A stretch of DNA of 63,570 nt, counting the filler, from Octopus bimaculoides (taxonomy: Eukaryota): NCBI RefSeq assembly GCF_001194135.2. It is 3 parts of 2 records of this genome, joined end to end, with 100 filler letters (N's around TTAATTAATTAA, not from the genome) between each part and the next. Parts side by side here need not be neighbours in the genome. Positions count along the whole stretch, not along the records: positions 25,442 to 56,937 come from NC_069006.1; 2 more parts are not named here. One strand, given 5' to 3'. Positions 50,876 through 51,883 of the stretch are shown one piece after another; position 1 is the first letter of the stretch; each line of letters begins with the position of its first letter. Below the pieces are notes generated by a model, which saw only the letters and a list, made by a program, of their open reading frames with translations, did no database searches and was not told the origin of the DNA. Position numbers and translations under genes: made by a program.

Positions 50876-51883
50876 ATGTCTTCGTTGATTCCACTGAAAG
50901 AGTTCACCGAGGTGTGAAGCAGTGCAGCAAATCTTTATGACAAGGCTAAATTCCTTCAAGGTGCCCAACAAATCGAGACGGTTGCAGCTGATAGCACAGC
51001 CAAAATTTCTTATAATCTACACTGTATCTACATGAAACTGAAACAATATGAGAAGTCCTTAGAGAACAGTCAAAAAGCAGGGAACAAGGATACACATTTC
51101 ATTGCAACTTATGTGCAGATGGCTGCAATTTATTTGGAATATAACATTTATGATGCTGCAATCAAGTGTTACGAAGTAGCTATACATTTGATGGGTAACA
51201 AGAAATATATCAACTACCAACCTCCGGGATTGAACCTAATTTTATATTTGACAGAGGCTCTCCACAACTATGCTGTTGCTGAATCAAAAGCTGACAACTG
51301 GAAACAAGTAGAGATCTTAATAAACATGGCCATCAGAGCTCAACAGGAGGACAAATTTAACAACAAACTTAAAATATCTTTACAGGCCGTCCAGCAAAAA
51401 CAACTCCAACAGTTTGACATCGGAACTAGAATCTTCCATCCACCCAAATGGATGATAGAAAGTACAAAGAATGTCGACTACCTGGGAGATTCCAAGGTTA
51501 TTTCGACCAACAAGAATCCCTTCTCTATGAATGAAACCAATTCAAGAAGCAAGTCAGCAAACGACGAGTTATGGCCCAATCTCAAGGAACAAGAAGCAGG
51601 GCAAAAGAAACAAATGAAAACCATGATTGAACTGCTAACGACCATAACGTTAGATACAGCAATGGAAACTATTGATAAGGCGAAACAGATAGAGAGCAAT
51701 CTTGGCACAGATGGTAAACCGCAACAACCACCAAGACCACAATCTAAATCACCACCAATTTGACCTCCTCTTCCACCAAGATTTTCCGGGATTCGTAAAC
51801 TTCCTCAACTGTCAACTAACAATGACCTGAAATCTCAAGACAATACAAAAAATGTCATCTCCACTGAGGAAAACACTGCTTAA
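50876..51883 (+). pseudogene. NCF2: p67phox/NOXA1 (NCF2)-like NADPH oxidase activator: TPR domain + activation domain + Pro-rich region, intronless, with two in-frame TGA codons (50915-50917, 51761-51763)
   Basis: ATG 50876 is in frame with the 243-aa ORF at 51032. The translation aligns along human p67phox residues 1-~230: KISYNLHCIY~RICFNIGCMY, KDTHF~RDKHL, LMGNKKYINYQPPGL~LRGNQLIDYKILGL, EALHNYA~EVLYNIA, RIFHP~KLFRP, DYLGDSKVI~DYLGKATVV, QPPRPQS~EPPPRPK. Family assignment is confident; pseudogene versus functional status is unresolved. Confidence 0.8.

What the first reader, a model, noticed from the sequence alone, without database searches (positions are those of the whole stretch)
50876..51883. 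p67phox/NOXA1-like NADPH-oxidase activator nested antisense inside a neprilysin intron
Seen: an uninterrupted 336-codon frame on the + strand inside the 9-kb intron between M13 exons 52047-52226 and 42890-42976 (- strand). Established: it aligns to the Rac-binding TPR domain and activation domain of p67phox. The activation residues Y198, L199 and V204 are conserved (DYLGDSKVI), as are D67, H69 and N104, while R102 is M and D108 is N. Inference: this is a retro-derived or intron-poor Nox activator, possibly with altered Rac dependence, lacking recognisable intact SH3/PB1 modules and nested in a peptidase gene. The ORF track shows only its last 243 aa, so an annotator would probably call it an unknown TPR protein.
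Basis: partly seen in the sequence, partly recalled or inferred. Interest (0 to 1): 0.75.

Follow-up and report, generated by a model that had tools for sequence, protein, structure and literature searches.

The report
Dead retrocopy of octopus NCF2 gene
This is an ordinary broken, intron-less copy (a processed pseudogene) of the octopus p67phox/NCF2-like gene that landed backwards in an intron of a neprilysin-type peptidase gene; it is not a working NADPH-oxidase activator.

Summary
The p67phox homology is real (PDB NCF2 TPR and activation domain, E=4e-18). The "uninterrupted 336-codon frame" is not: it holds two internal TGA stops (50915-17 and 51761-63).

The window is Octopus bimaculoides chromosome CM046626.1. 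The same genome has an intact multi-exon NCF2-like parent gene (XP_014769700.1, 389 aa, about 39 kb) on another chromosome.

Window 50295-51981 is colinear with that gene's spliced mRNA. It runs from the predicted transcription start, about 30 nt after a TATA box, through exons 1-7, a 41-nt cassette exon that defines the SH3-less isoform X2, and the first 90 nt of exon 8. Every junction sits at a parental GT/AG site.

On the retrocopy branch dN/dS is about 1.07 (7 synonymous, 28 non-synonymous changes, including W14* and R297*). On the parent branch it is 0.12.

A contig from a related octopod has the same M13 exon and intron but lacks 49447-51992, so it shows an empty site. Polarising with Argonauta places the insertion after the bimaculoides/sinensis split.

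There is no poly(A) tail. The 3' end is cut inside exon 8 at a short microhomology, 54-65 nt from the host exon's splice donor.

Verdict: a lineage-specific dead processed pseudogene, antisense in an M13 peptidase intron. Low interest.

The parts
50295..50875 (+). Retro-copied 5' UTR, the non-coding part of parent exon 1. The first copied base corresponds to L003 2487, 29-35 nt downstream of the parent's TATAAAA box.
   Evidence: blastn and MAFFT against the O. bimaculoides parent (L003) and O. sinensis (L001). TATA box position. Homology stops at the same base in both parents.
50876..51883 (+). Disabled coding sequence of NCF2-like isoform X2 (335 codons in the parent). The exon 1 to 7b junctions fall after window 51064, 51147, 51256, 51394, 51496, 51812 and 51850.
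   Evidence: All junctions coincide with parental GT/AG intron boundaries.
50915..50917 (+). Premature stop W14* (TGG>TGA, a G>A change at 50917).
   Evidence: W is found in the O. bimaculoides, O. sinensis and Argonauta parents.
51761..51763 (+). Premature stop R297* (CGA>TGA, a CpG transition at 51761).
51851..51891 (+). Copy of the 41-nt cassette exon 7b (L003 28552-28592). It carries the native stop of isoform X2 (NVISTEENTA*, TAA at 51881-83).
   Evidence: (P0008 and P0004 end in NVISTEENTA).
51892..51981 (+). First 90 nt of parent exon 8, the N-terminal half of the SH3 domain, which is 3' UTR in isoform X2. The copy ends here, or up to 8-14 nt further. There is no exon 9 and no poly(A).
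   Evidence: The sequence beyond about 51990 is M13 intron shared with L004.
52047..52226 (-). Host M13 (neprilysin/ECE-type) peptidase exon (IDQGDLGMPSADYF...IQIAN). Its 5' splice site lies only about 54-65 nt from the 3' end of the retrocopy.
   Evidence: Peptidase_M13_N, E=1e-75.
42890..42976 (-). Next host M13 exon (ITEPSEGRRDYETMYKKFTIEELTNKLPE). It closes the intron, about 9.07 kb long, that holds the retrocopy.
49447..50294 (.). Extra sequence directly 5' of the retrocopy, also absent from the empty-site contig. It consists of (TA)n, an assembly gap (N 49471-49572), about 550 nt of unique 45% GC sequence, and (TA)n/(ACAT)n. Its origin is unknown.

Best explanation
Window 50295-51981 is a processed pseudogene. 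A spliced mRNA of the Octopus bimaculoides NCF2 (p67phox)-like gene was reverse-transcribed and inserted, in antisense orientation, into an intron of an M13 peptidase gene on chromosome CM046626.1. The parent gene lies on chromosome CM046621.1. The source mRNA was the SH3-less splice isoform X2, which includes the 41-nt cassette exon 7b. The copy starts at the parental transcription start, so it carries no promoter. It ends inside exon 8 without a poly(A) tail. The insertion happened in the O. bimaculoides lineage after its split from the O. sinensis lineage. Since then the copy has drifted neutrally and picked up two nonsense mutations. It most likely does nothing. Shown here: colinearity with the spliced parent, the existence of the parent, the disabling mutations, neutral substitution, the empty site and the phylogenetic placement. 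Inferred: the insertion mechanism. The lack of poly(A), the 3' truncation, the 6-8 nt microhomology at the 3' junction and the missing target bases suggest internal priming or endonuclease-independent, break-repair-type retroposition.
For: (a) The assembly is GCA_001194135.2, record CM046626.1.

(b) The parent XP_014769700.1 (P0006, 389 aa) and its isoform X2 (P0008, 335 aa) exist in the same genome on CM046621.1. The gene spans about 39 kb. My exon model reproduces both isoforms (P0006 over the 365 residues encoded by exons 1-8, checked by string comparison; P0008 by eye).

(c) The window is colinear with all exons. Junctions are exact at parental GT/AG sites. Identity is 92% without gaps.

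(d) The 5' end lies 29-35 nt after the parental TATAAAA. Both parents lose homology at the same base.

(e) Branch counts for the retrocopy are 7 synonymous and 28 non-synonymous (omega about 1.07). This is not different from the neutral expectation of 72% non-synonymous (p=0.35). About 1.5 stops are expected and 2 are observed. The parent branch has 13 synonymous and 6 non-synonymous (omega 0.12). Fisher's test, retrocopy against parent, gives p=0.0009.

(f) Logan contig L004 has the M13 exon and intron but skips window 49447-51992.

(g) With Argonauta as outgroup, 5 amino-acid states are shared-derived by the retrocopy and the O. bimaculoides parent. One supports each alternative grouping. 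Of the 26 retrocopy-only changes scored against Argonauta, 17 are clearly derived, 1 matches Argonauta and 8 are uninformative.

(h) The exact 243-aa ORF is recorded on one contig only, the genome, and on no Logan run assembly. This is weak evidence against abundant expression.
Against: - Classical hallmarks are missing or untestable. There is no poly(A) tail. Target-site duplications could not be assessed, because an assembly gap (49471-49572) and about 850 nt of unexplained sequence adjoin the 5' end.
- Both retrocopy-specific indels in the coding part are 3 nt long. With only two indels, this is a faint hint of past frame conservation.
- A 282-codon stop-free stretch survives.
- Expression was not tested.
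- The species behind L004 is unknown. Its empty site could in principle be a secondary deletion.
Confidence: 0.93

Rival explanations
1. It is a functional retrogene that encodes a shortened p67phox-like protein. This could be the 243-aa ORF starting at M53. Alternatively it could be a full X2-like protein if the UGA codons are recoded, for example by A-to-I editing of UGA to UGG. That edit would restore the ancestral W at codon 14.
For: A 243-aa ATG ORF and a 282-codon open stretch persist. The activation-domain motif is intact. Both coding indels are in frame. The first stop is exactly TGG>TGA, a change that editing could reverse. Coleoids edit heavily (general knowledge).
Against: Omega on this branch is about 1.07, with 28 non-synonymous changes. 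Seventeen of them hit residues that are identical in the two Octopus parents compared and in Argonauta. The M53 start would remove the first TPR. The second stop would edit to W, not the ancestral R. The parental promoter was not copied. No run assembly carries the ORF.
Confidence: 0.03
2. It acts as a regulatory antisense element. Because the copy is antisense in the M13 intron, M13 pre-mRNA contains about 1.7 kb that is 92% complementary to NCF2-like mRNA. The two could form dsRNA, a substrate for ADAR or for siRNA production, and so modulate the parent. This would resemble the NOS pseudogene antisense RNA of the snail Lymnaea (recalled from the literature, not checked here).
For: Only the geometry supports this: antisense orientation within a transcribed host gene and high complementarity.
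Against: The nucleotide divergence of the copy is 59/1580, or 3.7%. That matches the neutral per-lineage intron divergence of about 3.3%, so no sequence constraint is visible. Intronic RNA is short-lived. Co-expression is unknown.
Confidence: 0.03
3. It is an assembly artefact, with cDNA or a transcript scaffolded into the genome.
For: Several N gaps lie nearby. The copy has no introns.
Against: It differs from the parent mRNA at about 8% of sites and by several indels, so it is not a copy of the current transcript. Its 3' end runs without a gap into M13 intron and exon sequence that is conserved in an independent contig.
Confidence: 0.01

Closest known systems
Processed pseudogenes (retrocopies made by LINE reverse transcriptase), as catalogued in mammals and other animals
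   Same: An intron-less copy of a spliced mRNA. The multi-exon parent lies on another chromosome. The copy starts at the transcription start without the promoter. It shows neutral substitution, nonsense mutations, a lineage-specific insertion and an empty site in a relative.
   Different: There is no poly(A) tail, and the 3' end is truncated inside an exon while the 5' end is full length. This is the reverse of the usual 5' truncation. Target-site duplication is not demonstrable. About 850 nt of unexplained sequence sits at the 5' junction.
Endonuclease-independent or internally primed L1-type insertions at DNA breaks (Morrish et al. 2002, recalled from memory, not checked here)
   Same: 3' truncation, absence of poly(A), junctional microhomology (parent GATAAAATTGTAGTA against target GATAAATTAGGTA), loss of target bases, and possible filler DNA.
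   Different: The mechanism is inferred from one locus only. The responsible octopus reverse transcriptase is unknown. A later deletion of the 3' part cannot be excluded.
p67phox / NCF2 and NOXA1 (NADPH-oxidase activator subunits)
   Same: The TPR domain and the activation-domain motif are recognisably homologous (E=4e-18 to PDB NCF2).
   Different: The reading frame is broken and under no selection. The SH3 is truncated and out of frame. The true octopus family member is the parent gene on CM046621.1, which itself lacks PB1 and the middle SH3.
Lymnaea stagnalis NOS pseudogene antisense RNA (Korneev et al. 1999, recalled from memory)
   Same: A molluscan pseudogene whose antisense strand could be transcribed and pair with the parent mRNA.
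   Different: Here there is no evidence of a stable antisense transcript or of constraint. The antisense strand exists only as intronic pre-mRNA.

Membership tests
Processed pseudogene / retrocopy | Colinear with the spliced parent mRNA, with introns removed exactly at splice junctions | tested here: met
   Eight junctions (exons 1-2 through 7b-8) coincide with parental GT/AG boundaries.
Processed pseudogene / retrocopy | An intron-containing parent gene elsewhere in the same genome | tested here: met
   XP_014769700.1 on CM046621.1, about 39 kb with 10 exons including 7b. The retrocopy is on CM046626.1.
Processed pseudogene / retrocopy | Starts at or after the transcription start, with no parental promoter | tested here: met
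   Homology begins 29-35 nt downstream of the parental TATAAAA, at the same base against both parents. The transcription start itself is predicted, not measured.
Processed pseudogene / retrocopy | 3' poly(A) tail | tested here: not met
   The copy ends inside exon 8 at about 51981-51995. It is followed by M13 intron sequence shared with L004.
Processed pseudogene / retrocopy | Target-site duplication | tested here: inconclusive
   The 5' side has an N gap and unexplained sequence. The empty-site contig has 45-77 nt that are not found in the window.
Processed pseudogene / retrocopy | Empty orthologous site in a related species | tested here: met
   L004 (SRR11869384) joins window 51990 to about 49447. 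The species is not identified.
Processed pseudogene / retrocopy | Disabling mutations and neutral evolution | tested here: met
   W14*, R297*, omega about 1.07 against 0.12 in the parent.
p67phox/NCF2/NOXA1 family (as a functional member) | N-terminal four-TPR Rac-binding domain and activation domain | tested here: met
   phmmer to PDB NCF2 chains, E=4e-18, covering residues 21-206. This is homology only.
p67phox/NCF2/NOXA1 family (as a functional member) | Intact open reading frame from the family's start codon | tested here: not met
   TGA at codon 14 and at codon 296 of this frame.
p67phox/NCF2/NOXA1 family (as a functional member) | C-terminal SH3 domain that binds the organiser subunit | tested here: not met
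   Only the first 30 codons of the SH3 exon are present. They lie downstream of the X2 stop and in another frame.
p67phox/NCF2/NOXA1 family (as a functional member) | PB1 domain | tested here: not met
   Absent here. It is also absent from the octopod parent proteins (Pfam scan of P0006).
p67phox/NCF2/NOXA1 family (as a functional member) | Purifying selection on the protein | tested here: not met
   7 synonymous and 28 non-synonymous changes, which is not different from neutral.
Expressed functional retrogene | Transcription from the + strand | not testable with these tools
   There is no RNA-seq access. The only indirect point is that the exact ORF is found on the genome contig alone.

The most novel reading that the evidence does not exclude
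The copy is not inert. One version: coleoid A-to-I editing recodes UGA(14) back to UGG (Trp) and UGA(296) to Trp, so that an SH3-less p67phox-like decoy protein is made. The other version: the roughly 1.7 kb of antisense NCF2 sequence carried in M13 pre-mRNA pairs with NCF2-like mRNA and feeds ADAR or siRNA pathways, coupling a peptidase gene to NADPH-oxidase regulation.
Probability: 0.03. Interest if true: 0.6.

Novelty: new member of a known kind. Interest (0 to 1): 0.12.

Why it matters
It matters little biologically. It is one more lineage-specific processed pseudogene.

It has three minor uses:
- It warns annotators that the 243-aa ORF (51032-51763) should not be called a novel TPR protein or a second Nox activator.
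- It is a dated fossil showing that the SH3-less X2 splice form of octopus NCF2, with cassette exon 7b, was already made in the germ line at roughly 84% of the age of the bimaculoides/sinensis split (from the branch counts, assuming equal rates).
- Its odd junctions (full 5' end, no poly(A), microhomology) give one data point on how retrocopies form in cephalopods.

Tried and rejected
- Frameshift at 51884. I first read the frame change before the SH3 fragment as a mutation. It is rejected: the shift is the 41-nt cassette exon 7b of the annotated isoform X2.
- Retrocopy continuing to the M13 exon. The A-rich sequence at 51982-52046 looked like degenerate exon 8 or a decayed poly(A) tail. It is rejected, because from about 51990 on it aligns to the M13 intron of L004.
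- Orthologous O. sinensis M13 intron. Two protein searches with M13 exon peptides returned only short Logan fragments and no full-length octopus M13 protein. The O. sinensis locus could not be fetched. The first search did yield the useful empty-site contig L004.
- Species of SRR11869384. A literature search found nothing.
- Segment 49573-50206. blastn against the window, L001, L003 and L004, plus Rfam, ARAGORN and Pfam on its ORFs, all came back negative. The Rfam mir-297 and mir-1277 hits at 50212-50306 are microsatellite artefacts below the gathering scores.
- Literature on octopus retrogenes or processed pseudogenes and on cephalopod p67phox. Nothing specific was found.
- DNA-level duplication with intron loss, and an intron-poor orthologue. 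Both are rejected. The parent with introns is in the same genome, and the copy begins exactly at the predicted transcription start.

Full report
**Observation**

The + strand frame from 50876 does encode a p67phox-like protein, but it is not uninterrupted. Direct translation gives MSSLIPLKEFTEV*SSAANLYDK...SKSPPI*PPLPPRFSG...NVISTEENTA*. The TGA codons are at 50915-50917 and 51761-51763, and the TAA is at 51881-51883. The only ATG-initiated ORF of note is 51032-51763 (243 aa).

The stop-free 281-residue stretch matches PDB chains of human NCF2 (p67phox), namely 1hh8, 8wej, 1e96 and 1wm5. The E-values are 4e-18 to 1e-16 over NCF2 residues 21-206, which covers the TPR domain and the activation domain. 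Pfam sees only sub-threshold TPR repeats.

Y198, L199 and V204 are kept, as are D67, H69 and N104. R102 is M and D108 is N.

**Where the window comes from, and the parent gene**

The 243-aa ORF is recorded on GCA_001194135.2, record CM046626.1, at about 12.13 Mb. This is a chromosome of Octopus bimaculoides. It lies inside a gene on the opposite strand whose 745-aa product carries Peptidase_M13_N and Peptidase_M13.

A protein search found "neutrophil cytosol factor 2" of O. sinensis (P0002, 389 aa, 84% identical) and an Argonauta hians homologue (P0003). The 90% cluster of P0002 also holds two O. bimaculoides proteins. These are XP_014769700.1 (P0006, 389 aa) and its isoform X2, XP_014769701.1 (P0008, 335 aa, ending ...DNTKNVISTEENTA).

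P0006 is encoded on a different chromosome, CM046621.1, at about 37.34 Mb, by a gene spanning about 39 kb. So an intact multi-exon parent exists in the same genome.

**Anatomy of the copy**

tblastn and blastn show that the O. sinensis and O. bimaculoides genes are split into many exons. The window is one colinear block.

With exon boundaries refined at the GT/AG sites, my exon model reproduces both annotated isoforms (P0006 over the 365 residues encoded by exons 1-8, checked by string comparison; P0008 by eye). The mapping onto the window is as follows:

| Parent exon | Window coordinates | Note |
|---|---|---|
| 1 | 50295-51064 | 581 nt of 5' UTR, then the ATG at 50876 |
| 2 | 51065-51147 | |
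| 3 | 51148-51256 | |
| 4 | 51257-51394 | |
| 5 | 51395-51496 | |
| 6 | 51497-51812 | |
| 7 | 51813-51850 | |
| 7b (41-nt cassette) | 51851-51891 | |
| 8 | 51892 to about 51981 | first 90 nt only |

Exon 7b carries the stop codon that defines isoform X2. The change of frame in front of the SH3-like fragment AEYKEVGRTVFVKYNLLSSNPNILIAR is therefore a splice-form signature, not a mutation. The source was an X2-type mRNA.

The first copied base corresponds to L003 2487. This lies 29-35 nt downstream of a TATAAAA box in the parent. Both parents, which remain alike further upstream, lose similarity to the window at that same base. The copy therefore begins at the predicted transcription start and lacks the promoter.

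At the 3' end there is no exon 9 and no poly(A). From about 51990 onwards the sequence is M13 intron (see below).

**Is it alive?**

I aligned the retrocopy (R), the O. bimaculoides parent mRNA (B) and the O. sinensis parent mRNA (S). Of 1580 gap-free sites, 59 changes are private to R, 44 to B and 61 to S.

In the coding part the branch counts are as follows:

| Branch | Synonymous | Non-synonymous | dN/dS |
|---|---|---|---|
| R (retrocopy) | 7 | 28 | about 1.07 |
| B (O. bimaculoides parent) | 13 | 6 | 0.12 |
| S (O. sinensis parent) | 12 | 18 | 0.40 |

These rest on 209 synonymous and 784 non-synonymous sites. The R changes include W14* (TGG>TGA) and R297* (CGA>TGA at a CpG).

- The R ratio does not differ from the neutral expectation of 72% non-synonymous (p=0.35).
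- The B ratio does differ from neutral (p=0.0003).
- R and B differ from each other (Fisher p=0.0009).
- About 1.5 nonsense changes are expected among 35 neutral substitutions, and 2 are seen.
- Seventeen of the R-private amino-acid changes hit residues identical in O. bimaculoides, O. sinensis and Argonauta.

The one faint contrary hint is that the two R-private coding indels are both 3 nt long. R102M and D108N are present in all octopod parents and say nothing about this copy.

**Age and empty site**

A search with host M13 exon peptides returned a 1065-nt Logan contig from run SRR11869384 (L004).

- L004 1-325 aligns to window 52309-51990. This is the M13 exon plus the first 55-60 nt of the intron, at 89% identity.
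- L004 403-1065 aligns to window 49400-48717, at 82% identity.
- With the weaker match visible, the shared sequence resumes at about 49447.
- The roughly 2.5 kb in between is missing from L004, which instead has 45-77 nt not found in the window.

That is an empty site in a related octopod. The species is unknown. Its intron identity to the window (82-89%) brackets the 87% seen between O. bimaculoides and O. sinensis introns. However, its mismatch rate over 48717-49400 is about twice as high, so it may be somewhat more distant.

Polarising amino-acid differences with Argonauta gives 5 states shared-derived by R and B (for example M53, A139, R154). Only 1 supports B+S and 1 supports R+S. The retroposition therefore happened on the O. 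bimaculoides lineage after the split from O. sinensis.

Branch lengths (R 3.7%; intron mismatch between the two species about 6.7%) put the insertion fairly soon after that split.

**Mechanism (inferred)**

A full-length 5' end combined with a truncated, poly(A)-less 3' end is the opposite of the usual target-primed pattern.

At the 3' junction the parent mRNA reads ...AGG GAAGGC GATAAAATTGTAGTA. The window reads ...AGG AAGAGTTA GATAAATTAGGTAC. The empty site reads GATCAATTAGGTAC on the + strand. This gives 6-8 nt of microhomology exactly where cDNA synthesis would have been primed from the - strand.

Together with the missing target bases, this fits internal priming or endonuclease-independent insertion at a break. 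It rests on one junction, and a later deletion of the 3' part is not excluded.

The 850 nt between the shared intron and the 5' end of the retrocopy (49447-50294) remain unexplained. They include an assembly gap and microsatellites. The rest has no copies in about 140 kb of other octopus sequence and no Rfam, tRNA or Pfam signal.

**Host gene**

The concatenated - strand exon peptides match Peptidase_M13_N (E=1e-75). The HEITHGFDD exon matches Peptidase_M13 (E=2e-22).

The intron between 52047 and 42976 is about 9.07 kb including N gaps. The 3' end of the retrocopy lies only about 54-65 nt from the exon's GTAATG donor.

**Comparison and verdict**

The feature meets the defining tests of a processed pseudogene except for the poly(A) tail (absent) and the target-site duplication (not assessable). 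It fails the tests for a functional p67phox/NOXA1 family member: intact ORF, SH3, and selection.

The real octopus Nox activator is the parent gene. It has TPR repeats, an activation domain, a proline-rich region and one SH3, with no PB1.

"Uninterrupted frame" and "Nox activator with altered Rac dependence" are not.

No literature specific to this locus was found. This is a new member of a very well known kind, and interest is low. Two exotic readings cannot be excluded without RNA data, and nothing here supports them: editing-rescued translation, and antisense pairing through the host pre-mRNA.

Noticed in passing
L003 28552-28592 (O. bimaculoides parent), L001 42893-42933 (O. sinensis); window copy 51851-51891: A 41-nt cassette exon with an in-frame stop produces an SH3-less NCF2 isoform (X2, ending NVISTEENTA). 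It is conserved in O. bimaculoides, O. sinensis and O. vulgaris (P0008, P0004). The retrocopy shows that this splice form is at least as old as the insertion.
   Followed up: partly
Parent proteins P0006, P0002, P0003 (human p67phox positions 102 and 108): All octopod NCF2-like proteins, Argonauta included, have M at the Rac-contact R102 and N at D108. They lack a PB1 domain and have a single C-terminal SH3. The octopod Nox activator itself may contact Rac differently. This is a property of the parent, not of the retrocopy.
   Followed up: partly
window 49447-50294: About 850 nt directly 5' of the retrocopy are also absent from the empty-site contig. They comprise (TA)n, an N gap at 49471-49572, about 550 nt of unique 45% GC sequence, and (TA)n/(ACAT)n. 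No repeat copies and no RNA or protein family hits were found. The origin is unknown. It could be filler cDNA, a low-copy transposable element, or old intron.
   Followed up: partly
window 48596-48772 (-); L004 820-1065: A mariner/Mos1-type transposase remnant (Pfam HTH_48, E=2.7e-8) sits in the same M13 intron. It is shared with the related octopod contig, so it is older than the retrocopy.
   Followed up: partly
window 50212-50306: Rfam E-value hits to mir-297, mir-1277, mir-3149 and mir-466 fall on a TA/ACAT microsatellite. All are far below the gathering scores, so they are low-complexity artefacts.
   Followed up: yes
window 26062-26264, 27398-27478, 41696-42065, 44127-44136, 46509-46518, 47375-47653, 49471-49572, 55797-55806: There are eight assembly gaps (N runs) inside the piece. 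Intron sizes and the size of the inserted block are therefore minimum or unknown values.
   Followed up: no
L003 42411-44651 (-), L001 56683-65894 (-): The parent NCF2-like gene is followed, tail to tail, by an ODF2-like gene (Pfam ODF2_N, ODF2_C) in both O. bimaculoides and O. sinensis. This conserved synteny marks the true orthologous locus.
   Followed up: no
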